A DNA stretch of 64,000 bases from NCBI GenBank assembly GCA_904063045.1, contig CAJFCJ010000009.1, positions 1,488,968 to 1,552,967 of the forward strand, written 5' to 3'. Made by a program: the position numbers and the translations under genes. The notes beneath the pieces were generated by a model, which saw nothing but the letters and a program-made list of their open reading frames with translations, searched no databases and was not told the origin of the DNA. Positions 23,031 through 59,505 of the stretch are shown in pieces (positions within the stretch are counted from its first letter, which is position 1; every line of letters starts with the position of its first letter). This DNA is from Dimorphilus gyrociliatus. Taxonomy: Eukaryota > Animalia > Annelida.

Positions 23031-26000
23031 ATGAATGCCGATCTCGCAGCTGATAACATTTCATTTTATGGTTTATTCAATTCTGACGCCTATGATACTC
23101 TAATTAAGCACGTTGAAGAGGAATTGAAGGAAAATGCTAGACAGTGAGTTATATTATAAAATTATTCCACATTGTAATTTAAAAGATGTAAACAAAACAT
23201 ATACATGGTTTATATGTTTCAGATTGGAAGCTTGTGTGTCGGAAGTGACTGATTTATGTTTAGAATTCCCCGAGAAGAAAGAAGATGAAGAGAATCCGGT
23301 TGAAGCCCTAAAATTTGTCCGCCAGAATCGAATATTAGATTCTCTGAGTTGCTTTGATTTAGATGCCGATCAATTAACTTGTACCTTATCTGATATAATT
23401 CAGAACAGCGAGAGAAATGAAAAGCAACTCGCATTAGATATTTTATACACATTCGAAAAAGAAGGTATTGTTTATCCTAAACCGGGAGCTGACTTAAGCG
23501 AATCCAGGTTAAATGTCGTAGACGATGCTGGTGACAGAGCAACTCAGGATACATGGAATGTTCTCATATCGAAACTCAAGCGTTCTCTTTTGCACGATGC
23601 TACGCCAGAATCTATATCTTTGGCGTCAGCTTTTTCTTGTCCTCAATCTTTATGGACCTCATACAGTGTTTTACGAATGCAGTATTTACAAAACCTCTTC
23701 CGATCATCACCTACCTCTACTTTTACAGAATATATCGATTCAGTGGTCCAAAAGTTGAAGATTTATACATCTTGTGCCATATCAGATTTGGAAAGTGTAG
23801 CATGTGGAGCCCTTAGCCCACCACCCAACGCCTTGAATGTTCTTTATGAAGATGTTTTATTTGATTTGTGCCATTCTATATCAAACATGCTGCAACCAAC
23901 TGAGTGCAATGGCCGACTATCATCAACTCCAGACGCTGTTAGAAAGTCCAGGAGCGAAGCTACTTTCAAAAAACCACCCTTATCTAGACTTCGGCAGCAG
24001 AGTAGTTCTGTAGAAAACCTTAACACAAACCATGTCCTAAGCACAGAGCAATTACTCGACTTATGTAGATTTATAGACGCTGCATCCGATGCTCTTCGGG
24101 AAATAGAAGAGATGAATTACTGTTTACTTTCCTCTCTACCTCGTTCTCGCACTAGATCTGTAAAATCAGCTTTAAAGCCAGTTACAAACAAAGAAGATAT
24201 ACCCGAAACTCGAAAAATCTGGGTGTCGTACTTGGACAAGCACTCTCAGGCCGTTATTGCTACTATTCAAATATACTTGAAAGAAAATGTCCAAAATATA
24301 AAATTCTGCGAAGAGTTTCATGTTTTACCGGGAAGAAGCCCAAAAATAATTGACAAGCAAATACTGAGAATATGGAACAATATAAATAGAATTGTTCCAG
24401 TGTCAAAAGAAAGCTCTACAGTAGTTCAGAATGCTTTTACCGATTATTGTTCTCATTCGTTGAAGAATCTAATGAAACAGTTTTACGCATTTTTGGAAAT
24501 CATTGCTAGTGGAGATAGGTCTAATGAAGATTATTTTCACGTACTGGCCTCTACTATATACCTAGCCGAAAAAACAAGAAAGATAAGTGCGAAATCCGAC
24601 TTCGGCCAACTTGTGGGAGCTGTTATCGACCAAATAGTTTCCTCTCAAATGTCAGTCATCTCATCTAGCGTTCTTCAAGACGCTGATAGTCAATTTTGGA
24701 AAAGCAGTCAAGCATTTTATGAAGATGAAAGATGTTCTTTTTCAGTTCAAGCTTGGCATAACAGGATGTTTTACATACGGCATCACCTGGCAAAAATTGG
24801 TGTACCAGCCACAGAGAGTCGTAAAGTATTGTCAAGAATTCTAAAAGAGTCGCTAGATATCTTAGTAGATCGTTATATAATGGCGGAACCATCGTACAAA
24901 AAGACGCCTTTAATTCTAAAAGATATTCTATCAACTCTTCTTTTCGCTTCCGACCACTTGTTGGCGGCTTCCTCAAATATTGGCGACTATCTAGACGCTG
25001 TGGAATCAAATGTCTACAGATGGATCCATACAAATTGTAGTTCTCTGCTGGCAACGATGGCAATAGTTTCTTCTCCACTAAAAACATTGTACCGCACTTT
25101 TAAAAGAGGTTATGCAAAGAAAAAAACAAATGCTTGCGAAGATGAATTATTTCTTAAGGCCTATCCATCTCATTGGCTGTCTTGGATTAGACCAAGTTTA
25201 ATTCCGTTTGGCTTTTCTTCTATGTTCGAATTGCAGACTTTTTCCGCAATTTATTTACAAGTTGAATTGCTATCTTCTCAGACTGAGCCTCGGTTAGACT
25301 TACTTTTGGAAGCTTTAACGCTAAAGCATTATACATTGAGTATACTACTGCTGAAGAATGTAACTGACGAAAAATATTTTACTTCGGTTCTCTTCTTACT
25401 AGTTCATACCTTTCCTGATGCTTTAAAATCTTGTTTAATTCCACTAATTGACTCGGCTGACGAATGGTCTGTTTTGGACGGCCATTCTACGCCGACAATA
25501 TGGCTCAAATCTCTCATTACTCTTCTGGAACCATTGTTTAAGCGACCAAGTAGAGTAGCCAAAAAGTTCTTAGAACGCACAATACCCCATTCCATATTTA
25601 AAGATGACTTGTTGGCATGTGGCTGTCAACCCTCACTAGAAGACGATTCTACGGAATTTGATTCATTTTCGGAAGCATTAACGTATTTAATCCGGTCTTT
25701 TGTTGACTTGAGCGCAAGTTTACCCCCTGCACTGGCTTCTTTCATCACAGCAGCCGATTCAAAAACAGATAATGCTCCAAGAAAGAGCGTTGCTTGTTTA
25801 TTGTTTGCAGCAGCAGCTAGAAACACCTTACAAAGGATGGAGAGTACTACATTGGCCCAAGCAATTTTTAGTGTGCTTGTCTTCGAGAAACCTTCAAATA
25901 AAATAGCCGCAGAGTTTGTTAAAAAGAATGAAAAATTCGTGGAAGCATGTGTTAAGAAGATCATTAAAAATACGGAAAGAACAGAATGTGGAGAAATAGA

Positions 26001-26454
26001 AGATGTTGACAAATATCTATCTCAAGAAAGTGAATTAGTATTTTCAACAATATCTGATTGTGTCCTGGAAAAGATAGACGGAAAGAACGCTTTTAATAAT
26101 GTATATCAATTAGTGACGCAAAATAAGTGTTGGGTAGGCAGCGAGCTCAAAGTTTCTCTCTTCTTCGGCGTTCAATCAGCTGACGTTGAATTTCAAATGC
26201 CGGTCGACGTTATTGATGAGCCATTTAATCCCATTCAAGAGTCAACGCACGTTCATGGCGTTCGATTTGAACATAAATTTGTAGAGGAATATCAGCTCGA
26301 TTGGGAGCGGCTACTACAAAATGATTTGGGACTATCGGAGGCAAATGTTCGGCTATTAATAAGTAAGCGAATTGAGTTCAGGGATAATAACGGATTAAGT
26401 GATGACGAATTAAAATACGTCAAAACCCTCAAACAGGTTTTCGCCATTCCTTGA
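23031..26454 (+). CDS. KIAA0825: KIAA0825 (C5orf36) homologue, 2 exons: 23031-23143, 23223-26454
   Basis: LQDADSQFWKSSQAFYEDERCSFSVQAWH..ILKESLDILVDRYIMAEPSYKKTPLI matches the remembered KIAA0825 block ([53 protein letters not shown]). The N-terminal exon splices in frame (ca|gtgagt..ttcag|a). Confidence 0.8.
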
Positions 26455-46557: not shown

Positions 46558-49500
46558 ATGACACCTCTTTGGGTTATTTTTGCATGCTTTTGCGTGTATT
46601 CTGTAGAGAACGCCGCAGTTCCCACGAAAAGTAAGAAATTTTCAACTTTCTTTACAGTTTGTCAAGTCTTTTTAACTTTTAAACCTTCTTTATAGCATGT
46701 ACGGCCATTCAGAATTGTGATGATTGCAGTAACCCCGCTTTGACATGTACAAGATGTCCAGCAGGTTATACAATCAAGAGTGACGGACAAAAGTGTTTAC
46801 GTGAGTAATCATGGATACCGAGATCATTAACATAATTACTGAATACTTTTCATAAATTTAAACAGCTTGTCCCGACAACTGTTTATCATGTAACAACACG
46901 GAAGCCGAAAAGACCGTTTGTTTGGAATGTAAACCAAGTTATTGGTTAAAAAGTTCTGACAAAGTCTGCGAAAAATGTCCTAATAACTGCGCAACATGCA
47001 AAGAGAAGGGTACATCAGGAACTGCAGAATGTATAACTTGTTTTTTTAGCCATGGTTTAAAAAATGACAAGACCGGCTGCGTCCGTAAGTTATCAAATTG
47101 AAATTATATATTTTATAGATTAAGTATTACATTAAAGAATATTTCTTTATTAGCTTGTAGTGCAATGACAGGCTGTACAGTCTGTAAAGATTCAAATGAC
47201 GACAACGTTGCTGATATATGCGAAGCTTGTAGCAGCAATCAAGGTCTTAAGGGTGATAAGAAAGGATGCGTTGGTAAGATTTTGTCGATATTCCTTATGC
47301 AGTTTCAAAAAATATATATGCTTTTTATTCCTTTTGTAGCCTGTCCTTCAAATTGTCAAGTTTGTACTGACGCAGATAATGATGGTAAAGCAGAATGTTC
47401 ATCTTGCAGCAATCTTTTCGGTCTAAAACCCGACAAGACAGGGTGCGCTAGTTGTTCAGCTTTAGGATCTGAGTGTCTTACGTGTACTATTGGAAATGAT
47501 CAAACAACGCCATCTAGTTGCGATTCTTGTACTGGTGGTTATGTCGTTCGGGGCAATAAGCAAGGATGTTCGAAGTGTCCTGATGGTTGCAAAATCGACA
47601 AATGTTCGGATTCACAAGGAACTGGTACTGCCATTTGTGAAGAATGTAAGGACACTTGGGGAGTTAAAATATCCAAAGCTGGATGCGTCAGATGTAACGC
47701 TAATTGTAATAAATGTACTGTTGAGGCTGATGAAACAACAACTAAGTGTACAGAATGCGTTGCCAGATACGAAAAGACCAACATGAACACTTGCGATTGT
47801 AAGTTTGAGAGTTTTAAATTTTATATCTCATGTTAACATACTTTAACAAATATTACAGTTTGCCCTGAAAATTGCTTGTCCTGCGAAATCAGCAATGGTA
47901 AGGTAGTTTGTAAGAGCAGTGGATGCAAACAAAAATATGCTTGGAAGTCTGATGATGGATCTTGCGTAAAATGCCCCGTCAACTGCAATGAGTGCTCCTA
48001 TTCTGGTGGTATTTCAAAATGTCGTTCCGGAAAGTGCATATCTGGTTATACAGATCGTGTTTCTGATGGAAAATGTTATCGTAAGTTAAATAGTTTACAG
48101 TTGAATATGTCTTTCATAAGTGTCCTTTCATTTTCAGAATGTCCAGATAGATGTAGCAAATGTAGTGATGATGGTACAAAAACAAAGTGCGGATGGCAAT
48201 ACTGTCAAATCGGTTCAGCTTGGAAGGGAGACGATGGATCCTGTCCAGAGTGTCCATCTGGCTGTAAATACTGTTATGCCGATCGCGAATATCTCATCAA
48301 ATGTTCCATTTGTCATGAAAAGAAAACTTTGACCAGTGACAGAGCAGGCTGCACAGATTGTCCAATTAATTGCAATGAATGTGAGCTTGTTGATAATGTT
48401 GCCAAGTGTTTAGACCAACAGTGCTACGATGGCTATTATAGAGATGATAATGGACAATGCAAAGGTTTGGTTAGGGCTGAAATGTTAACTTATTTATTAT
48501 AAATATATGTTTTAAATAACTTTAGCATGTTCGACCGGTTGCAAATCCTGCATCAAGAGTGGCAGTACTACTGAGTGTTTAGTATGTAAAGCTTATTATG
48601 TAATGAACCCAACCACAAAAAAATGCGTTTGTAAGTAGTCTTATTCATTAATAAATGATTTTTATATATCAAAATTTCTCCAGCATGTCCTGGCGGGTGT
48701 GAAACTGGTAAATGCCAATTCTCATCAACAAAATCAGTATGCTCAAAATGTTTGAAAGGTTTTGTTCTAAGCGACGGCAGTTGCAGAGGATGTCCGTCAA
48801 ATTGTGATACATGTAAATATGAGGGTGGTAAAACAATCTGTACAACGTGCTCAGCCAAGCACTATCACGTTCAAACACAAATGTGCATAGCTTGTCCACC
48901 TGGATGTAAATCTTGTACTGAATCAGGAACCACAGTTATTTGTAATACTAATCAATGCTTATCGGGATATGAATACTATAATAACAAATGCTATAGTAAG
49001 TCAAGTGAAATTTAAAACACTACATTTACATAATATTTTATAAATACTACAGAATGTCCTTCTAAGTGTACATCCTGCACTGGAATATGGAGTGCATCAG
49101 TTTTCAAGACTGTTTGTGACACTAATAAGTGCTCAGGTGCTTTTGCAACTGACAGTAACGGTTTGTGTCAACCGTGTAGTGAAAACTGTGAATCATGTAC
49201 ATCACCGGGAAAATGCTCCAAATGTAATACTGGGTACATTCTTGCTGGTTCTGCATGTGAAGGTTAATTGTATAATTTAATTATTATTCAAAATTAAAAC
49301 TGAAATATTTTCCTTTTCATTTAGCTTGTGCAACAAACTGCGCAGATTGTAGCCAGCCTGGAAAGTGCTCAACCTGCCTCCCTGGATATAAATTGGACAG
49401 TGATGAATGCAAAGGTAACATTGATATTCATTTTTCTCTGATAAATTTTTACGAGAAGATTACTTTTATTTCTTTAGAATGTGCTGCGAAAGATCAGTGT

Positions 49501-52500
49501 GAAACCTGTAATGATCAAGGAGCTGGCCGTTGTGATTATTGCAAACTGGGATATGTAGTTAAAGACAACTCTCAAGCTTGTCTACAATGTCCAGCTGGTT
49601 GTAATTACTGTGAGCAAAAGAGTCCAACATCTGACGACCCTTGGTGTAAACCTGGAGGGTGTAAAATTGGATTCGCTCAGAAAAGAAACAGAGATTGTAC
49701 CGAATGTCCCCCAGGATGTGCCGAATGTACATATGATGCCACTGAAACGAACCTATTATGTCGTGCTGGAAAGTGCAAGCAAGGTTATACAGAAAGCTCT
49801 GGAGTTTGCGTGAGGTGTGCTGACAATTGTATTACCTGTAACGCTCAAGGAAAATGTAACGAAAAAGGATGTAAATCAGGATATACTAGATCTTCGAATG
49901 GTCAACAATGTGACAGTATGTGATAATGGTTTATCAAATCTTATAAATTTTAATGATTTTCCTTTCACTCAGAATGCGCCAATAATTGCTTTAAGTGCGA
50001 TATTAAAGGAGCTGCTAAATGTGACGAGGATGGATGCAACACAGGATTTGCCTACGATAATGAAATCTGTCAACCATGTCAGCCTACTGTTTGCTCTAGA
50101 TGCTCTAAGAAGGATAAATGTGATAATGGAGGTTGTATTGGAAATTATATATTGAAAGATGAAATATGTCAAAGTATGAATATTTTAATCTAGTTTTGAA
50201 TATTCGCTAAACATAAATATATTTCAACAGAATGCGATGACAATTGTAAAACTGCAAGATGTACTCAAAATGGACCAGGAAAATGTGATGTTGGTGAATG
50301 TAAGGATCATTACGTTCTTGATAGTAACAATGAATGCAAAAGTTTGTGATATGAATTTATATTTGAAAAGTATTCAAAATTTATGTCTCTCTTTTCAGGA
50401 TGCGATAATAATTGCGAAGACAACCAATGTGGAGGTTTTACTGTTGGTGGGAAATGCAATGAACTAAAGTGCAAATTACATTATACATGGGAATCTGATA
50501 GTTGTCACCAATGTGATACCAACTGCTACTTTTGTGATGGCTGGGGCAAAACTAAATGCGATGTAGACAGATGCTTTGAAGGTTATAGAATCAAATTGGA
50601 TTCTAGCGTACACACTTGTGAAAGTAAGCTTCACATCAAAAAATTAATTTTGTTTGCAATCAGATTATTTGCTTATCATAACAATATCTACCTATAGCAT
50701 GCTCTGTTACGAACTGTGCAAAATGCGACGCTGACAGAACCCAGTGTCAAAAATGTAAAAAAGGCTATACCCTAAACAGCAACACTTGCGACAGTAAGTA
50801 AAGTGGAATCGAATACCTTTAGTTTTCGGCAATTAAAAACATTCTATTATTTCAAAGAATGCTCCGACAACTGTGATTACTGCGATGTTGATGGGAAGGA
50901 TACATGTGATCAAGGATGGTGTTCAAGCGGTTACGGTTGGAACCCCGATACTCGACTCTGTGCACAATGCGCAAATTCGTGTACTAAATGTAGTAAATAT
51001 GGACATAACAAATGCGATTCAGCCGCACATTGTCCCGCTGATAAAGGCTATGATTCAACTAATCATGATTGCTTAAGTAAGACTGTTTAAAAATGAAACA
51101 ACTTAACCTACTTTTCTATAATGTTAATACCAAACAGCTTGCGATTCGAACTGCAATCCTGGAAAATGTACGGAGGCTGGTAAATGTTCAGCAGACCAAT
51201 GTCAATCAGGTTTTAAACTCAAAGGCGACAACACTTGTGAAGGTAAAAATTGACAATGTTTAAATAATGAAGAGTTCTTTTTATTAAAAATTTACAATTG
51301 ATATTTCAGCATGTGCAGACACTTGCAAAACTTGCAAAGAAGCTAATGATGCAACAAAATGTCTCAGTTGCAAGGCTGCTAACCAGTTCGTAACGGATTT
51401 AGTAGGAGGAAGTAGTTGTATACGTAAGTATTGAAAAAGATTAGTATTTGTAAATTTTAGCGAGCGTCTAAAACTAGTATTTTATAGAATGTGCGTCAAA
51501 TTGTAAGGTTGGCCAGTGCTTCGCAGCAGGAAAATGTAATAAAGATCAATGTATGGATGGGTATATGTTAGCTACAGATTATACATGCACAGGTAAAAAG
51601 AATTATTGTCCAGTTAGAAACTGCTAATTTAACTATTTTGTTTTTTAAAAAAGAGTGTGGATCGAATTGTAAAACTTGTTCGGCAGTTGGTAAATGCACA
51701 AGTTGCATGGGAAATAGATTCTTAAGTGGCGATCAATGCTTAAGTAAGATATAACAGTTAAACGCCTTGTAAATTAGTTATTCTTTGATATCTATTAAAT
51801 ATCTAGCTTGCGATCCAAACTGCAAACCTGGAAAATGTTCTGCAGAAAATAAATGTGATAGTCAACAATGTATGAACAATTACAAGTTCAAGGCAGATGA
51901 TCAAACTTGTGAAAGTAAGAAGTATATTACATCTATAACACTGTTATGTTATCTTTCATTTTAATAGAATGCCACGATGAATGTGCGACATGTGCTGCAG
52001 CAAGTGATGCTTCTAAGTGTTTAACTTGTACAGCTACAAGAAGTAGTGATAATGTTGCCGGTGGTACATGCGTTGGTGAGATATTTAATTGACTATGAAA
52101 CTGAATATATAATTTATATTTCTGCAACCCTTTTTCACGCCAAAATTCCAGTTTGTGATCCTAACTGTAAAGCGGAAAAATGTACTACAGCTGGACAGTG
52201 TAGTGAGTGCAGCGATGGATATGCGCTTGATGGAAATGTTTGTAAACGTAAGTAACAGATTTTATTTAAATAGTTCACTTAAATATAAATCTTTCATGTA
52301 GCATGTCACGCTGACTGTACAACATGTGCACAGCATAACGATGCTGCTCAATGCAAGTCTTGTAATGATCCAATGAAAGGCATCAAAGATGGTGCGGGTA
52401 CAGGAGAATGTATTGGTAAGAAAATTTTTACACAATAATTAAGATGAATCTCCATATTTCTACAACTTTTGTTTTATATATTTTTAGCATGTGATGTTAA

Positions 52501-55500
52501 TTGTAAACTGGGCCAGTGTACTACAGCTGGGCAATGTAAGGCAGATGAATGTAAAGATGGTTATGCACTAGATGGAAATTTTTGTAAACGTAAGTATCGC
52601 ATTTTATTTAAATTATTTGATTCATAATAAATATATCTATCATGTAGCATGTCATCCGGATTGCGCAACCTGTAAAGCTCATAATGACAAAGATAAATGT
52701 TTAACTTGTGCATCTCCTAACAAAGGTAGTGAAGATGCATCTAATGGCGGAGCATGCGTTGGTGAGAAATGTGCTTGATAATAAAAATGAATAATAAAGA
52801 TATGTTCTTCTCCCTCATATAATTTTAGTATGTGATCCTAATTGTCAACCGGGTGAGTGCACAGTGGCTAACCAGTGTAATACCGACAAATGTATAGACG
52901 GTTATGCAAGCGAAGGAACTGGTTGTACAAGTAAGAAATATATTTTACTTATTTAATTCAGTTAATTATAAATTTCTCTAAACTTCAGAATGTCATGTCA
53001 GTTGTAAAACGTGTAAAGCGCATACTGTTGATAATAAGTGCCTTTCTTGTATGGATATAACGAAAGGCGTCAAAGATACAGCTCTAGGAGGACAATGCAT
53101 TGGTACAAAAAAATTTACACTATGATTAAGATGAATATCCATATTTCTATAATTTTTGTTTTATATAATTTTAGCATGTCATGCTAATTGTAAACTGGGC
53201 AAGTGTGATACAGCTGGACAGTGTGACAATGGAGAATGTAAAGATGGTTATGCAAGCGAAGGAACTGGTTGTACAAGTAAGAAATATATTTTACTTATTT
53301 AATTCAGTTAATTATAAATTTCTCTAAACTTCAGAATGTCATGACAGCTGTAAAACGTGTAAAGAGCATACTGTTGATAATAAGTGCATTTCTTGTGTGG
53401 ATACAACGAAAGGCGTCAAAAATACAGCTGCAGGAGGATCATGCATTGGTACAAAAAAATTTACACTATGATTAAGATGAATATCCATATTTCTATAATT
53501 TTTGTTTTATATAATTTTAGCATGTCATGCTAATTGTAAACTGGGCAAGTGTGATACAGCTGGACAGTGTGACAATGGAGAATGTAAAGATGGTTATGCA
53601 AGCGATGGAACTAGTTGTGCAGGTAAGAAATATATTTTACTTATTTAATTTAGTTAATAATAAATATATTTATTATGTAGCATGTCATCCGAGTTGCGCA
53701 ACGTGCACAACTGCCAATGACGCAAATGCATGTAAAACTTGCGTGTCAGCAACTGGGAGTACAGACGCCGCTACTGGTGGATCATGCGTTGGTAAGAAAT
53801 TTAATAGACAATTAAAATGTACAGTTTTTTATAGAATGTTACATATACTTTCAGTTTGTGATCCCAATTGCCAACCAGGGCAGTGCAATGAGGCTGGGAA
53901 ATGCAATGCAGGAAAATGCAAAGATGGATATGCGCTTGATTCAAATGTTTGTAAACGTAAGTAACAGATTTTATTTAAATAGTTCAGTTAATTATAAATC
54001 TTTCATGTAGCATGTCACGCTGACTGTACAACATGTGCACAGCATAACGATGCTGCTCAATGCAATTCTTGTGTTGATTTAACGAAAGGCATCAAAGATG
54101 GTGCGGCTACAGGAGAATGTATTGGTACGAAAAGTTTTATAAAATGATTAAGATGAATCTCCATATTTCTACAACTTTTGTTTTATATATTTTTAGCATG
54201 TGATGTTAATTGTAAACTGGGCCAGTGTACTACAGCTGGACAGTGTTCCGATGGTAAATGTAAAGATGGTTATGCAAGCGATGGAACTGCTTGCAAGCGT
54301 TAGTATCCTATTTGATTGAATATTATTCAATTTATATTTAAATATATCTATTATGTAGCATGTCATCCGGATTGCGCAACGTGCTCAGTTCATGGTAACG
54401 CAGCTAAATGTTTAACTTGTGTGTCTCCATCGAAAGGTAGTGCAGATGCGGGTGCTGGTGGTGCTTGTGTTGGTAAGATATTAAGTGTAAGATTAATTAT
54501 AATCCATAACTCTTATACTCCTTATTATCTATAGTTTGTCATGAGAACTGTCAATCGGGTCAGTGTATTGAAGTAGGCAAGTGTAACGTTGACAAGTGTA
54601 CGGCGGGTTATATATACAAGACAGCTGACAAGACATGTGAAGGTAAAGAGTGTATTTTTTATAATAACTTTATTATTCTTACAAAATACTTTTCAGCGTG
54701 TCATGGAGACTGCTTAACTTGTACAGTCGCTGACGATAATACTAAATGTCTTTCTTGTATATATCCAAAGGCTACCACAAATCCTATTGATGGTGGAAGT
54801 TGCATTTGTAAGTTATACTATAAAAAGTTGATTTTTTAGCCGGTATAATTGCTGTTAACGTACTTCAGCTTGTGATTCTAATTGTAAAGAAGGTGAATGC
54901 ACAGCAGCTGGAAAATGTAATAAAGATAAATGCAAAGATAATTATATGTGGCAAAGTGATGGAACTTGCGCACGTAATGAATATATATATATATATATTT
55001 ATTTATGCATAATTAATCAATAATAACTTTTATTATGCAGAATGTGCTAGTGACTGTAAAACGTGCAGCGTAAAGGCCGATGCGAGCAAATGTCTTACAT
55101 GTGTTGATCTATCAAAAACCAGCACAAATTCCGTAGATGGTGGCTCATGCGTTGGTAAGAAAATCTACAAAAACATCTCTCTTAAACTAGTAAAACTGTT
55201 AACAAATATAACTTTACTCCAGCTTGCCACGATAGCTGCAAAAGTGGAAAGTGCTCCTCTACTGGCAAATGTTACGGGGATTTGTGTAGCGTCGGCTTTT
55301 TTCTGAAGTCAGATGGAACTTGCCAAGGTTTTTAATCTATTATAAGAGAAGATCTTTCATAACTATAATATTTATTTTCTATCATTAGCATGTGATCAAA
55401 CTTGCAGTACCTGTTTTGGTAGCACATTGAGCGATTGTATCACTTGTAAAGGTGATAGATTTTCCTCCGGCGGTAAATGTATTAAATGTCACGAAGAATG

Positions 55501-58500
55501 CATGACGAATGAATGTACTGAAGACGGTAGTTGTAAAAAGAATAAGTGTAAAGACGGTTTTACAAATAATGTTAGAACGGGAAACACTGTATCCGAGTTA
55601 CAATGCTCCAAAGCATGTGTTAGTAACTGTAGAAGATGTGATAATGCAGGTGAAAATAAATGTGATAAAGGAATGTGCAAAGATGGTTACGTTTGGGTCA
55701 ACTCAGGCGAATGTGCAGGTAAGGGGTATTTAGAATAGAAATAAGAATACTAGTAAATCTTATACTTTTATTTAGCATGTTCTTCTAATTGTATGAGTTG
55801 TTATACAAACGGAAAAGATAAGTGTGATACAGGCAAATGTATGTCTGGCTACACTTATGACAGTTCTGACAAAACCTGTAAAGCTTGCGGAAGTAACTGC
55901 TTGAAATGTGATAAGACAGGAGCTGGCGCTTGCGATTACGATCAATGCGTTAATAACATGATCTATGACAAAGCAAGCCAAACGTGCAAAAGTATGATAA
56001 TAAAATAATTAATAACAAAATACCACCTTAAAACTTATACTTTAAAAATTTAGGTTGTGATGTAAACTGCCAACCTTACCAATGCTATAATAGCGGTAGA
56101 CTCGATTCAAAATGCAATGATGATAAGTGCAAAACAAATCTCAAGATAGATAGTACTACTAAAACGTGTAAGCCTTGTCATGCTAACTGTAAAGCTGGAC
56201 AATGTACCGAGCCTGATACTTGTACCAATGGACAATGTATGGACAGATATGTTTCAGATGGCAATAAATGCTCCGGTAAGTTTTAATATAATTTTGCGTG
56301 TTAACATTTCATATTGCTGTATTTTAATTTATATCAGCTTGCTCTTCAAACTGCAAAAAGTGTGAAACAAAAGGAAAAGGAAAGTGTGACGAAGGTGAAT
56401 GTGACGTTGGTTTCGTATGGGTTAGTGACAGCTGTAAAAGTAAGTTAAGGTTTCATATCAAAGTTTCAAAAGTCATAAATCCTATGTCTGAATAGAAACA
56501 ATGTGTAATACTGGAGAAGCAATGAATCATTTAGGAACTTGTTTAACTTGTCCTACTGGTTGCTTAAAATGCCGTATTAAGACTAACAATGTAACCACTG
56601 AATGTATACCTGGATTATGTGAGCAAGGTTATACATACAGCAACGGAATTTGCGTCGGTAAGTCGAATCTAGTCGTCTTAAGGTTCAAGCTCTAACAATC
56701 TTGATTATTTACTTTAGCATGTCCTTCGAATTGCGATACATGTTTCTATTCGCAAGGAATATTAAAATGTTCAAAATCTGGATGTGAATCTCGCTACGGA
56801 TACAAAGATGAAACTTGCGGTCAATGTGCTACAGGATGCGAGGAATGTTCAAAATCAGGATCAGAGCTAGCTTGTGATTCTAGCAAATGTTTAAATGCTT
56901 ACGCACAAGTTTCTTCCAATACATGTTTGAGTAAGTGGAAGAGCATAATTTAAATATTATTCCTTATTTTCATCTACTCACTTATAGAGTGCTATCGTGG
57001 ATGTGATACCTGCACAATGAACACACAAACCAACTTCCTTGGTTGTAGCTCCTCTTCATGTTCAACTAGTTATACTCAGCTAGCGGATAAATCCTGTTTC
57101 TTATGTCCAACAAATTGTAATTCGTGTACTTATACTGAAGCTCTTTCTCAGACGAAGTGCGACTCGAACAAATGTGACACTGGCTATGTAATGAACAATT
57201 TGGATAAATCATGTCATAAATGTCCCACAGGATGTCATAAATGCAGTTATACAACTACACCAGTATGTGATATTCTTCAATGTAAGGATGGTTACGTTCA
57301 AAATCCCATATCAAAGGAGTGCAAAGTATGTCCATCTAAATGCTCAGCCTGCTTCTTTGATGAAGCAACCGCTGACGCTAAATGTTATGACAAAGGCTGT
57401 AGTATAAATTCTTACATGTCGAGTGGAACTTGCCTGAGCTGCAATTCAAACTGTCACCGTTGCATGAACGTTCTGGGAACTAAACAATGCTTTGATCAAA
57501 AATGTTCGGACAATTATGGGCTTAAATTTAACGATCGGCTATGCTATGCCTGCCCTGAGGGATGCAAACATTGTGACATTGCTACTGATGGAACCCCTAC
57601 TTGCAATACGTGCCAGAGTGGATACGCAATGAATACTGCTGACAAAACTTGCAAAATTTGTCCTGAAAACTGTAATGTCTGTGACTATGATGCAGGTATC
57701 ACTGATACCAAATGTCAGAGCGGCCAATGTAAAAGCGGATTTGCACAGAAAGACGATAATCGTTTAGGTTGCGTCCAATGTCAAACCTGTACCGCTTGCA
57801 CATACAACACAGAGAATCCATCCGTTCCAGACTGCGTTGATAATACATGTCCAGCTAAACAACAGGTTCAAACCGTAGGCAAACAATGCGGAAGTAAGTT
57901 ATTTACTTTATTCAATTTGAAGTAGTTAGCTATTTATAATATGGGGCTTATTTTGTTAGAATGTCCAACTAATTGTGCTGCTTGTGATGGAGATTTGAAA
58001 TGTACATTGTGTGATAGCAGATACGCTCTACAAGCAACAGATAAGCAGTGTATCGGTAAGCTACAAGAAGACGATTTTTCTTTTAATAGATAACTAACCA
58101 AGTAAAATTTTACAATAGTCTGTCCTGCCGATTGTCATTCTTGTGACTCTCTTGGCAATGGAAAAACTGGCTGCAAATCAACTGGATGCAATTCGGGCTA
58201 TGTCGTAACAGATGAAAAACTATGTAAAAAATGTCCAGATAATTGTTTGGAGTGTACTTATAACGCTGATACGAAGAAATCGCTATGTAAATCCACAAGA
58301 TGCGCATCTAGATATGCTATCACAACAGATTTCCAATGCATGAGTAAGTAACAATCTTTGAGTTATTTTATATTTTTAAAACTCATTTTACCATTACAGA
58401 ATGTCCGGATAATTGTTATGAGTGCGTTGTTGGTGCTGGAGGTAAGACGGAATGTAATGAAAACAAATGTGATTCCCGATATGGATGGCGTTCTAGTGAC

Positions 58501-59505
58501 AAAAATTGTCACAAATGTCCAGATAACTGTGCTACTTGTCCTGAAGCTAATGGTGTTTTAATATGTGACAAATGTGTCTCCGAATTTACTCTTAGTAATG
58601 CCGAATGTGGTGCTTGTCCCAGACACTGTCTGAAGTGCACTGAAGAAGCTTCTGAAGGTCTTAAATGTAAAGAATGCGAGGCACGATACGTTTTGGATGA
58701 CAATAAAAACTGTGCCGCTTGTCCCAGCAATTGTAATAAATGCAATATTAACAATGGCGAAGCTAAATGTGAATCCTGCGATAGTGGCTATACTTTAAAC
58801 ACTGCTCTAACTTGCACAGTATGCCCATCTAACTGCCAAAAATGCGAATATAAAAATAACAAGGCTGAATGCATGATATGCCATAATGGCTATGCTATCA
58901 ATGCTCAGAAAGGATGCTCTCGATGCGCTGATGTTACCCAAGTTCTTAACTGTGACACATGCACAAATGCCGATTCTACAGGAAAAGGAAAATGCTTGTC
59001 ATGCGTTAATGGATATGGTTTGAAGGATGATGCCAAAGAGTGCTTACCTTGCAGCGATCTCAAAGATTGCTTGAACTGTAGAGATCAAGCTTTATTGTGC
59101 AACAAATGTTCCTCAGGATTCACATTAACTCCAGACAAGTTGAATTGCGGAATCAACTGTTTTACATGCAATAGGTCAGCCGACTGTGCCAATGATCCCA
59201 AAAAATCATCAGAAAATTCGACTTTATGTGTCCCAGCATTAGGTCAAACTTGCTGGATGCATAGATTCGAAGAAAACAAAGTAATTGAACACGAAAGAGG
59301 TTGCTTCAACAGCACAGATTGCGGTAGCCGCTACAAGAGCGAGGAATGTCAAGAAGCTAATGGTAAAAAGGAATGCAAGAAATGTTGTACAACTGACAAA
59401 TGTAACAGCCAAATCCTACCTGGAACTGCCTCACATCTAACATCAAATGTCTTAACGATACTGACTGTACTCCTCCTTGGAGTTGTACGAGCAGTATTCT
59501 ATTAA
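46558..59505 (+). CDS. Giant cysteine-rich GPI-type surface protein (about 3,260 aa; about 86 furin-like/VSP-like 6-Cys modules plus C-terminal Ly6/uPAR domain), 52 exons
   Basis: Hand-assembled exons: 46558-46630 (signal peptide MTPLWVIFACFCVYSVENA), 46696-46800, 46866-47084, ..., 56988-57893, 57960-58055, 58119-58343, 58400-59505. They sum to 9,786 nt with no internal stop. Modules follow C-x2/3-C-x2-C..C-x2/4-C-x2-GY..C. The protein ends CFTC..ERGC..CCTTDKCN and then the hydrophobic tail TASHLTSNVLTILTVLLLGVVRAVFY*. Confidence 0.88.
52214..54472 (+). repeat. Higher-order duplication: 52214-52761 resembles 53923-54472 (offset about 1,709)
   Basis: gatggatatgcgcttgat..gtaagtaacagattttatttaaatagttca..catgtcacgctgactgtacaacatgtgcacagcataacgatgctgctcaatgc is shared by both copies, including intron sequence. 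Confidence 0.9.
52900..53591 (+). repeat. Direct tandem duplication, 2 x 346 bp (exon-intron-exon-intron unit), with a partial third copy to about 53650
   Basis: ggttatgcaagcga starts at 52900, 53246 and 53592. The two introns (58 and 72 nt) are identical between copies. Confidence 0.95.

What the first reader, a model, noticed from the sequence alone, without database searches (positions are those of the whole stretch)
52989..53448. Youngest duplicate: introns identical, B exon hypermutated at amino-acid level
Seen by hand alignment of the 346-bp copies (52900-53245 vs 53246-53591): 0 differences in 130 nt of intron and 102 nt of A-exon. There are 11 differences in the 114-nt B exon (52989-53102 vs 53335-53448), 10 nonsynonymous and 1 synonymous (V>D, A>E, L>I, M>V, I>T, D>N, L>A, Q>S), with all Cys kept. 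The chance that all 11 fall in the B exon is about (114/346)^11, or 5e-6. The older pair 52302-52415 vs 54011-54124 likewise differs at 5 codons, all amino-acid changing. This is the reverse of neutral expectation. Inference: strong diversifying selection or exon-targeted gene conversion on a recognition surface. If the two copies are really alleles mis-assembled in tandem, it shows allelic hypervariability instead.
Basis: partly seen in the sequence, partly recalled or inferred. Interest (0 to 1): 0.9.

Follow-up and report, generated by a model that had tools for sequence, protein, structure and literature searches.

The report
Diverged exon inside identical tandem duplicate
Inside a giant cysteine-rich surface-protein gene of a spiralian invertebrate, a 346-base piece (two part-exons, one whole exon and two introns) has been duplicated head to tail, and the two copies differ only inside the whole exon, almost always changing amino acids; this is real and expressed, resembles the fast exon evolution seen in toxin and immune genes, and its cause is not settled.

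Summary
Copies 52900-53245 and 53246-53591 differ at 11 bases, all within 52998-53094 of the B exon: 8 amino-acid changes and 1 silent change, with every Cys kept. The other 232 bases are identical (p about 4e-6; 1-2e-5 after allowing for base-composition bias).

Both exons match DNA contigs and RNA contigs of independent runs exactly. In RNA each is as deep as the neighbouring unique exons, so they are tandem, constitutively spliced exons. They are not stacked alleles, polishing errors or mutually exclusive exons.

- dN/dS within the exon is 2.6 and not significant. The signal is the contrast with the flanks (10/88 replacement sites against 1/173 neutral sites, p = 1e-4).
- The "older pair" is not alike: its introns diverged as much as its exon.
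- Against a sister species, B exons evolve no faster than A exons and dN is far below dS.
- Deeper in the array, B exons are older than their own flanks even at silent sites, so recombination patchwork occurs here.

My best reading (0.5) is an unequal-crossover duplicate whose B-loop residues diverged under protein-level selection, with the flanks kept identical by youth and/or copy-to-copy conversion. The main rival (0.25) is a patch copied from an unsampled paralogue. This is a new member of a known kind, of moderate interest. Other scan notes cover this stretch; I found none of this pattern on other DNA.

The parts
46558..59502 (+). Host gene: a giant secreted cysteine-rich repeat protein. 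It starts with a signal-peptide-like first exon and ends with a 10-Cys three-finger-like module and a hydrophobic GPI-type tail.
   Evidence: Cys-rich open segments on the + strand only. There is an N-terminal hydrophobic Met exon at 46558 and a C-terminal 'CC..CN' motif plus hydrophobic tail. RNA contigs are spliced across it. No Pfam or PDB sequence match was found. Language-model features are nearest to VSP/Furin-like_2 clusters.
51138..55327 (+). Core array of 25 single-module, phase-1 exons that alternate between A (96-108 nt) and B (90-114 nt) types. Introns are 53-76 nt.
   Evidence: Exon table with AG/GT borders and an uninterrupted spliced reading frame. GT..AG joints are seen in RNA contigs of runs X2, X3 and X6.
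52900..53245 (+). Copy 1 of the 346-nt tandem unit: A6 tail (31 nt), 58-nt intron, B6, 72-nt intron, A7 head (71 nt).
53246..53591 (+). Copy 2 of the unit: A7 tail, 58-nt intron, B7, 72-nt intron, A8 head. A partial, more diverged third copy runs on to about 53665.
   Evidence: After 53591 there are 14 further matches, then about 10% mismatches.
52989..53102 (+). Exon B6 (37 full codons plus split codons). The divergence island is 52998-53094.
   Evidence: The DNA unitig 52968-53124 and the RNA contig 52989-53101 match exactly.
53335..53448 (+). Exon B7. The divergence island is 53344-53440.
   Evidence: The DNA unitig 53314-53470 and the RNA contig 53335-53447 match exactly. The wild-sample run X6 has one replacement change, 53392 C>T (S>F).
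53175..53276 (+). Exon A7, the chimeric junction exon. Its head is identical to the A8 head and its tail is identical to the A6 tail. The junction lies in the conserved KDGYAS-coding motif at 53245/53246.
   Evidence: DNA contigs of run X1 end at 52929 and at 53259, the two branch points that only a head(A8)+tail(A6) junction creates.
52829..52930 (+). Exon A6, with a different head and the same tail as A7. It is the left partner of the unequal exchange.
53521..53622 (+). Exon A8, with the same head as A7 and a different tail. It is the right partner of the unequal exchange.
52214..52530 (+). The older high-identity tract (A4 tail, intron, B4, intron, A5 head), paired with 53923-54239. It carries 16 differences: 7 in the exon, 7 in the introns and 2 in the A tail.
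   Evidence: The surrounding super-units are only about 79% alike, so this is a conversion or duplication patch between non-adjacent units.
53923..54239 (+). Partner of the older tract (A9 tail, B9, A10 head).
53103..53174 (+). The B-to-A intron. It is identical after B6 and after B7 and 86% identical to the introns after B4 and B9 (92% over its last 50 nt), whereas the B exons of those units are only 66-70% alike.

Best explanation
**Shown**
- A 346-base piece of the exon array was duplicated head to tail by unequal homologous exchange. The exchange fell between the conserved KDGYAS-coding motifs of exons A6 and A8 and created the chimeric exon A7.
- Both B exons are present in germline DNA. 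Both are spliced constitutively and in frame into the mRNA.

**Inferred**
- The two B modules differ because amino-acid changes at the exposed, non-cysteine loop positions of B were favoured, or at least protected from erasure, by selection on the protein. Selection on the protein is the one force considered here that would respect the exon borders without a further coincidence; an ectopic patch needs a roughly 6% alignment coincidence.
- The rest of the unit is identical because the duplicate is young, because the two neighbouring copies keep correcting each other by gene conversion up to the mismatch-dense exon core, or both. The result is a narrow island of divergence.
- There is no sign of ongoing hypermutation.
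For: **The duplicate is real and both exons are used**
- All 11 differences fall within 97 bases of the exon and none in the 232 flanking bases.
- Replacement sites of B (10/88) exceed introns plus silent sites (1/173, p = 1e-4) and replacement sites of A (0/79, p = 0.0017).
- Cys codons are untouched.
- The same loop columns vary in the independent pair B4/B9 (4 of 5, p 0.005-0.01).
- The chimeric A7 and the unitig breaks at 52929 and 53259 show an unequal-exchange origin.
- RNA depth puts both exons in every transcript. For B6, B7 and the two unique neighbours the values are 1711, 1998, 1527 and 1981 in X2, and 24, 26.4, 24.1 and 29 in X3.

**The divergence is stable, not ongoing**
- A slightly diverged wild metatranscriptome (X6) also carries both exon types. 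Over the parts of its contigs that read laying reports on (their ends are not reported), B6 shows no change and B7 one. The divergence therefore predates that split.

**Homogenisation of the flanks is plausible**
- In X6 both copies' A tails share a T where the window has A in both (52914 and 53260, E>D). This is a sign of concerted evolution.
- Units 6/7 and 4/9 share a B-to-A intron that is 86% identical, yet their B exons are 41-45% diverged at silent sites (p = 0.006).
- All six differences that read laying lists between X6 and the window change amino acids.
Against: - dN/dS within the exon (2.6) is not significant.
- If flank identity reflects youth alone, the implied dN/dS is about 20, which is extreme.
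- Long-term dN/dS is far below 1, and B is no faster than A against the sister species.
- The flank-homogenisation version needs conversion tracts on both sides to stop within 9 bases of the exon ends.
- The X6 evidence for concerted evolution rests on a single site, and it is read from contigs.
- DNA word depth in run X1 is puzzling. The B6 and B7 unitigs are at 139 and 134, the neighbouring unique unitigs at 193-203, and the shared flank at 234 rather than about 400. Single-copy haplotypes carrying only one B type may therefore also exist.
- No functional data exist for these residues.
Confidence: 0.5

Rival explanations
1. Ectopic gene-conversion patch (segment switch). After a clean duplication, the core of one B exon was overwritten in a single event from a roughly 90%-similar B exon of another member of this large gene family. 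The patch was confined to the exon because homology ends there.
For: - The differences look like one burst. Eleven lie between the copies, yet at most one or two have arisen since the split from the X6 lineage.
- Two codons differ at two adjacent bases.
- The array is demonstrably a recombination patchwork. There is a 317-base conversion or duplication tract between non-adjacent units, and some flanks are younger than their B exons at silent sites.
- Unchecked scan notes report many paralogous genes and 'silent fragments' elsewhere in this genome.
- One silent change among 11 is compatible with paralogue-type divergence (p = 0.05-0.20).
Against: - No donor was found in the window (the best other B exon is 70% alike and shares no 14-mers). 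None was found among 151 family homologues, in the protein databases or in metagenome DNA. None of these covers this genome beyond the window.
- The variable sites reach to within 9 and 8 bases of the exon ends. That leaves too little exon homology to start and end a tract. A donor would need similar introns, which pushes the exon-only puzzle back onto the donor.
- A tract of about 100 bases aligning with the exon by chance has odds of about 6% (my estimate).
- The one conversion or duplication tract identified in this array spans exon and introns (317 bases).
Confidence: 0.25
2. Captured alleles. B6 and B7 were two old, balanced alleles of one exon, whose flanks were homogenised by ordinary allelic recombination. 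An unequal crossover between the two haplotypes then placed them in tandem. Single-copy haplotypes may still segregate.
For: - DNA word depth of the B6 and B7 unitigs is about 0.5-0.7 of neighbouring unique sequence, and the shared flanks are near 1x rather than 2x.
- In X6 the same A-tail variant precedes both B types.
- Both types are older than the split between populations.
Against: - RNA depth parity in two runs argues that the tandem form is fixed in those cultures.
- The model still needs selection to explain why the divergence is bounded by the exon, so it is a variant of the best explanation rather than an alternative cause.
- Contig depth is a poor measure. Unique contigs nearby range from 193 to 345.
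Confidence: 0.12
3. Assembly artefact. Two alleles were stacked in tandem, or the introns were collapsed or over-polished, by the assembler.
For: - The DNA depth is ambiguous.
- Run X1 may be the sample behind the assembly, so it is not fully independent.
Against: - The short-read DNA graph breaks at 52929 and 53259, which requires the A7 junction words.
- The shared flanks are single unitigs without bubbles.
- In RNA of two separately labelled runs, B6 and B7 are each at the depth of the unique neighbouring exons.
- Both exons match exactly in DNA and RNA.
Confidence: 0.05
4. Exon-targeted mutator or somatic hypermutation acting on B exons.
For: Only the exon-limited pattern itself.
Against: - The same two sequences recur exactly in runs from 2017 and 2020. 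In a 2024 wild sample they recur unchanged but for one listed difference, over the parts of its contigs that are reported.
- There is no mutational signature (6 transitions and 5 transversions, with no hotspot motif).
- There is no RNA structure or known RNA element.
- Other B exons and the older pair show no excess over their introns.
Confidence: 0.03

Closest known systems
Accelerated evolution, or 'segment switch' (ASSET), in exons of snake-venom three-finger toxin and phospholipase A2 genes with conserved introns (Doley et al. 2008, PMC2474615; the PLA2 work of Nakashima et al. is cited from my own knowledge)
   Same: Young duplicates in which introns stay nearly identical while the exon segments that encode exposed loops of a disulfide-rich scaffold are replaced or diverge. 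The cysteines are kept.
   Different: Here the duplicates are neighbouring exons of one gene, both spliced into the same giant protein, rather than separate secreted toxin genes. Only one pair shows the pattern, and long-term dN/dS is far below 1.
Hypervariable mature regions of cysteine-rich peptides with invariant cysteines, as in conotoxins (PMC3862624) and mussel MgCRP-I (PMC4558851)
   Same: An invariant Cys framework, with replacement changes concentrated between the cysteines and conserved neighbouring sequence.
   Different: Those are small secreted peptides with a conserved pre-pro region. Here the unit is an internal module of a repeat protein, and no family-wide hypervariability of B relative to A was found.
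Divergence islands in tandem duplicates under gene conversion plus selection. Examples are the red/green opsin genes and MHC peptide-binding exons with homogenised introns, and the Teshima-Innan models (own knowledge, not read here).
   Same: The introns and flanks of neighbouring copies are more alike than the functionally distinct exon. In this array, flanks are shown to be younger than B exons at silent sites. A shared flank variant in both copies of another population also fits.
   Different: For the youngest pair, homogenisation is inferred from a single site. No phenotype or ligand is known.
Tandemly duplicated alternative exons of Dscam (population genetics in PMC3236188)
   Same: An array of similar, tandemly duplicated, frame-preserving exons that encode variable parts of an extracellular protein.
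   Different: Dscam variants are spliced in a mutually exclusive way. Here RNA depth and joints show all exons included together, so diversity is not generated by splicing.
Furin-like / Giardia VSP-type cysteine-rich repeat proteins (PF03302, PF15913)
   Same: CxxC-rich repeat architecture. Language-model features place a large exon of this gene nearest to such clusters (score 0.90, 175 shared features).
   Different: There is no Pfam hit for any piece of the gene or for its best homologues. This is an animal gene with a three-finger-like C-terminal module and a GPI-type tail.

Membership tests
Tandem duplication by unequal homologous exchange | Head-to-tail copies of one period, with a junction inside a motif shared by the two parental sites, giving a chimeric junction element | tested here: met
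   The period is 346 with 2.2 copies. A7 combines the A8 head with the A6 tail and is joined in the conserved KDGYAS-coding motif.
Tandem duplication by unequal homologous exchange | The junction and both copies are present in raw data independent of the assembly | tested here: met
   DNA unitigs end at 52929 and 53259. B6 and B7 unitigs and RNA contigs match exactly, and RNA depth is on a par with unique exons in two runs. Caveats: DNA depth is ambiguous and no spanning long read was seen.
Positive (diversifying) selection after duplication | dN significantly above dS within the exon | tested here: inconclusive
   pN 0.114, pS 0.043, ratio 2.6, Fisher p = 0.45.
Positive (diversifying) selection after duplication | Replacement changes exceed linked neutral changes (introns plus silent sites) of the same duplicate | tested here: met
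   10/88 against 1/173, p = 1e-4. Against replacement sites of the A exon, 0/79, p = 0.0017. This is valid only if no outside donor supplied the changes.
Positive (diversifying) selection after duplication | A persistent signal: dN/dS above 1 across the array and between species, with B faster than A | tested here: not met
   B5/B10 have pN 0.20 and pS 0.39. B6 against B4 has pN 0.34 and pS 0.45. Against the sister species, dN is 0.36 for B and 0.35 for A, with silent sites saturated.
Ectopic gene-conversion patch | An identifiable donor carrying the variant states as a block | not testable with these tools
   There is none in the window, none among 151 homologues and none in the protein or metagenome collections. 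The organism's own genome beyond the window could not be searched.
Concerted evolution with a selection-maintained divergence island | Flanks younger than the exon core at neutral sites | tested here: inconclusive
   Youngest pair: silent 1/23 against flanks 0/232, p = 0.09. Deeper level (units 6/7 against 4/9): met, with silent 0.41-0.45 against intron 0.14, p = 0.006.
Concerted evolution with a selection-maintained divergence island | Flank variants shared by both copies within a lineage but differing between lineages | tested here: met
   In X6 the A tail before both B types has T where the window has A in both copies (52914/53260). This is one site only, read from contig ends.
Mutually exclusive alternative exons (Dscam-like) | Each transcript carries only one of the variant exons | tested here: not met
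   B6 and B7 each reach the depth of the flanking unique exons in X2 and X3. Only intron-sized joints are listed.
Furin-like / VSP cysteine-rich repeat (PF03302, PF15913) | A significant match to the family profile | tested here: not met
   No Pfam family at E up to 1 for the exons of this gene or for homologues P0001 and P0005. There is only a feature-based lead.
Ly6/uPAR three-finger domain with GPI anchor | A profile match, or the 10-Cys pattern ending CC-x4-CN followed by a hydrophobic tail | tested here: inconclusive
   The pattern and tail are visible in the translation of 59152-59499. There is no Pfam or PDB sequence match.

The most novel reading that the evidence does not exclude
The B exons may be cassettes of a germline surface-diversification system in an animal. 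The scaffold (introns and A exons) would be kept uniform by conversion. B-loop cores would be repeatedly rewritten from a pool of paralogous or silent fragments, or driven apart by selection. Each new exon copy would then add a new specificity to a giant GPI-anchored coat protein. This would be analogous to protozoan variant surface proteins but built inside one gene.
Probability: 0.1. Interest if true: 0.8.

Novelty: new member of a known kind. Interest (0 to 1): 0.4.

Why it matters
The finding is a clean, small natural example of how a repeat protein gains a new, different module. The duplication breakpoints, the chimeric junction exon and the whole set of later changes can all be read directly. 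Both modules are shown to be expressed.

If selection caused the exon-only divergence, the eight residues mark the functional face of an uncharacterised, fast-evolving family of giant cysteine-rich surface proteins in a spiralian animal. If instead a donor exists, this genome would have a templated exon-replacement process, which would be worth studying.

The finding also carries a caution. In this array an 'intron conserved, exon diverged' pattern can arise from recombination patchwork, and it is not proof of selection.

Tried and rejected
**Donor searches**
- In the window, the other B exons are 47-71% alike and no shared 14-mer is relevant.
- A protein word search with the B6 open frame found no candidate.
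- A scan of metagenome contigs for a 21-base B6/B7-specific string returned 12 hits. Those with a source label are gut metagenomes and none sits on a record of this organism, so I took them as chance matches without inspecting them.
- blastp of B6, B7, B4 and A7 against 151 family homologues gave at most 50% identity.
- A look-up of earlier scan notes by sequence came back blank.

**Family naming**
- Pfam on five pieces of the gene and on two homologues gave nothing.
- PDB sequence search gave nothing.

**RNA-level explanations**
- There are no Rfam families in 50000-57000.
- The introns and both B exons fold no better than shuffled sequences.

**Species identity**
- I guessed the miniature annelid Dimorphilus gyrociliatus from the run metadata and read its genome paper. 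The databases hold no identical protein, so I dropped the name.
- The alanine aminotransferase next door says only 'spiralian' (best named hits Capitella, Lingula and molluscs at 66-70%).

**Depth and other tests**
- I tried to estimate the depth of the A7 junction unitig from the binned depths. The results depend on unseen contig borders, so I abandoned the attempt.
- Adjacent double substitutions as a sign of templating: about one such pair is expected by chance, so I rejected this.
- The older pair as a second example of the phenomenon: rejected.
Full report
**What is there**

The window carries one very large gene on the + strand (46558-59502). It encodes a secreted, cysteine-rich repeat protein. 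The protein begins with a signal-peptide-like exon and ends with a 10-cysteine three-finger-like module and a hydrophobic GPI-type tail.

The core of the gene (51138-55327) is an array of 25 short phase-1 exons of two alternating six-cysteine types, A and B. They are separated by introns of 53-76 bases. RNA contigs of three public runs show every array intron removed at exactly these borders.

No Pfam or PDB sequence match was obtained for any piece of the gene or for its best homologues. A language-model comparison places it nearest to VSP/furin-like repeat clusters, which is only a lead.

The neighbouring alanine aminotransferase is most like those of annelids, brachiopods and molluscs, at 66-70% identity. 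The sister-species contig carries SOCS-box and Gemin6 genes. The host is therefore a spiralian animal. I could not name the species.

**The observation**

It is correct to the base. Copies 52900-53245 and 53246-53591 differ at 11 positions, all between 52998 and 53094 in exon B6, matched against B7. The 130 intron bases and 102 A-exon bases are identical. Nine codons differ: eight change the amino acid (two of them by two adjacent bases) and one is silent. All cysteine codons are the same.

The placement is far from chance. The Fisher test gives 3.5e-6 and the span permutation gives 2.5e-5. The result is still 1-2e-5 if G/C sites mutate up to five times faster than A/T sites, a correction made because the introns are 17% G+C and the exons about 40%.

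**Is it real?**

In the DNA run X1 the word graph gives separate exact unitigs for the B6 core (52968-53124) and the B7 core (53314-53470). It gives a single unitig for the shared right flank (53095-53259). The unique upstream contig ends at 52929. The ends at 52929 and 53259 are the two branch points expected only if the chimeric exon A7 (A8-type head joined to A6-type tail) exists in the reads.

Runs X2 and X3 turned out to be RNA, because their contigs carry GT..AG joints. In both, exact B6 and B7 contigs have the same depth as the unique exons on either side. In X2 the values are 1711 and 1998 against 1527 and 1981. In X3 they are 24 and 26.4 against 24.1 and 29. Two alleles of one exon, or mutually exclusive exons, would each sit at half that depth. 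So both exons are in essentially every transcript.

The one discordant item is DNA depth. B6 and B7 are at 139 and 134, the neighbouring unique unitigs at 193-203, and the shared flank at 234. Contig depth nearby ranges from 193 to 345, so I treat this as unresolved. It leaves room for single-copy haplotypes in the sequenced pool.

**Origin of the duplicate**

The A7 head equals the A8 head and the A7 tail equals the A6 tail. The join lies in the KDGYAS-coding motif that most A exons share. This is the signature of unequal homologous exchange between A6 and A8. It agrees with an earlier scan note on this stretch.

**What the differences do and do not show**

The ratio of ten replacement changes to one silent change is not informative by itself. 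In this exon 79% of sites are replacement sites, and dN/dS is 2.6 with p = 0.45.

The informative contrast is with the rest of the unit. Replacement sites of B (10/88) stand against introns plus silent sites (1/173, p = 1e-4) and against replacement sites of the A exon (0/79, p = 0.0017). Taken at face value this implies dN/dS near 20.

The tract 52214-52530, paired with 53923-54239, has 7 differences in the exon, 7 in the two introns and 2 in the A tail. Exon and introns diverged at the same rate there. The two pairs differ significantly (p = 0.008). What the two pairs do share is position: four of the five B columns that vary in B4/B9 also vary in B6/B7 (p 0.005-0.01).

**Long-term behaviour**

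Older B pairs have pN below pS. A Logan contig from a sister species (L014) holds the orthologue of the 3' part of the gene, including B11, A12, B12 and A13. There dN is 0.36 for B exons and 0.35 for A exons, and silent sites are saturated.

B exons are therefore neither generally faster than A exons nor under lasting diversifying selection. What remains is an episode restricted to this pair.

**Timing**

A wild metatranscriptome (X6) shows six listed differences from the window across the array exons, a fraction of one per cent. It contains both exon types. In the parts of its contigs that are reported, B6 is unchanged and B7 carries one replacement change (53392, S>F).

All six differences listed between X6 and the window change amino acids. 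The B6/B7 divergence therefore predates that split and is stable. There is no sign of a running mutator or of somatic variation.

In X6 the A tail in front of both B types carries T where the window has A in both copies (52914/53260). This is a single-site hint that the flanks of the two copies evolve in concert.

**Recombination patchwork in the array**

The unit holding B6/B7 shares its downstream intron with the units holding B4 and B9 (86% identical, 92% over the last 50 bases). It also shares the following A head (about 85-90%). Yet the B exons of these units are only 66-70% alike and are 41-45% diverged at silent sites, three times the divergence of the adjoining intron (p = 0.006).

Silent sites cannot be driven apart by protein-level selection. 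In that comparison the flanks are genuinely younger than the exons, and conversion or exchange has reshuffled flanks and exons. The older B4/B9 tract is itself a 317-base patch of 95% identity between non-adjacent super-units that are otherwise about 79% alike. Conversion is thus active here, and the 'intron conserved, exon diverged' pattern can arise without selection.

**Weighing the explanations**

An outside donor would explain the burst-like character. I found none in the window, among 151 homologues, or in the protein and metagenome collections. None of these covers this genome beyond the window, so the test is still open.

Two arguments weigh against a donor. The variable sites reach to within 9 and 8 bases of the exon ends, which leaves almost no exon homology to anchor a tract. 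A donor with similar introns would only move the puzzle elsewhere.

Of the forces considered here, selection on the protein is the one that would respect exon borders without further coincidence. I therefore favour (0.5) a selected divergence of the B loops inside a duplicate whose flanks are identical through youth and/or continuing copy-to-copy conversion. The rivals are:
- an ectopic patch, at 0.25;
- captured balanced alleles, at 0.12, which also needs selection;
- an assembly artefact, at 0.05;
- a targeted mutator, at 0.03.

**Comparison with known cases and verdict**

The pattern belongs with several known cases:
- accelerated or switched exon segments in toxin genes with conserved introns (PMC2474615);
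- hypervariable cysteine-framework peptides (PMC3862624, PMC4558851);
- divergence islands in converting tandem duplicates such as the opsins and MHC (cited from my own knowledge).

It differs from Dscam-type exon arrays (PMC3236188) because all exons are included together.

The new element is the setting: two adjacent exons of one giant surface-protein gene in a spiralian, caught with breakpoints and all changes readable. That makes it a new member of a known kind. It is real and statistically solid, its mechanism is unresolved, and its interest is moderate (0.4).

Noticed in passing
window 53125-53225, with 52438-52538, 53471-53571 and 54147-54247: The last 50 or so bases of the 72-base B-to-A intron and the first 50 or so bases of the next A exon are 92-100% alike in four units (after B4, B6, B7 and B9). 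The first 20 bases of the same intron and the B exons are much more diverged. This is either a conversion hot segment or a constrained intron element.
   Followed up: partly
window 52152-54534: The array has a higher-order period of about 686 bases (four exons: two A subtypes and two B subtypes). The 346-base duplication breaks this period, leaving two KLG-type A exons in a row (A7, A8).
   Followed up: partly
window 51376, 52344, 52882, 52883, 52886, 53392: All six differences that read laying lists between the wild metatranscriptome run X6 and the window change amino acids (5 codons: A>D, A>V, T>A/N with a two-base change, D>G, S>F). None is silent. Pooled with the two young exon pairs, at most 2 of 25 recent changes are silent (p 0.02-0.08).
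   Followed up: partly
window 52900-53600, DNA run X1: Word depth of the B6 and B7 unitigs (139, 134) and of the shared flank (234) is lower than a fixed tandem duplicate predicts from the neighbouring unitigs (193-203) and long contigs (274-345). The cause could be copy-number polymorphism in the sequenced pool or uneven coverage.
   Followed up: partly
L014:1-5162 (Logan contig of a sister species) against window 54697-59502: The orthologue of the 3' part of the gene is conserved exon by exon. Amino-acid identity rises from 44-65% in the array exons to 70% and 81% in the last large exons. The contig starts inside the array, probably because repeats broke the assembly. The genes downstream are SIR2, Gemin6 and a SOCS-box gene.
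   Followed up: partly
window 53103, 53449, 54125, 54299: The array contains unusual donor sites: GTACAA after B6 and B7, GTACGA after B9 and GTTAGT after A10. RNA contigs show the B6 and B7 donors in use. The joints for B9 and A10 were not among those listed.
   Followed up: partly
window 23128-26451: A 1108-codon uninterrupted open frame on the + strand, probably a single-exon part of a large gene. I did not examine it.
   Followed up: no
P0001-P0150: The C-terminal exon of this gene has more than 500 relatives in the representative library, many of them 1000-3000 residues long. None carries a precomputed or detectable Pfam domain in the two I scanned. This is a large family of giant cysteine-rich proteins with no curated model.
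   Followed up: partly
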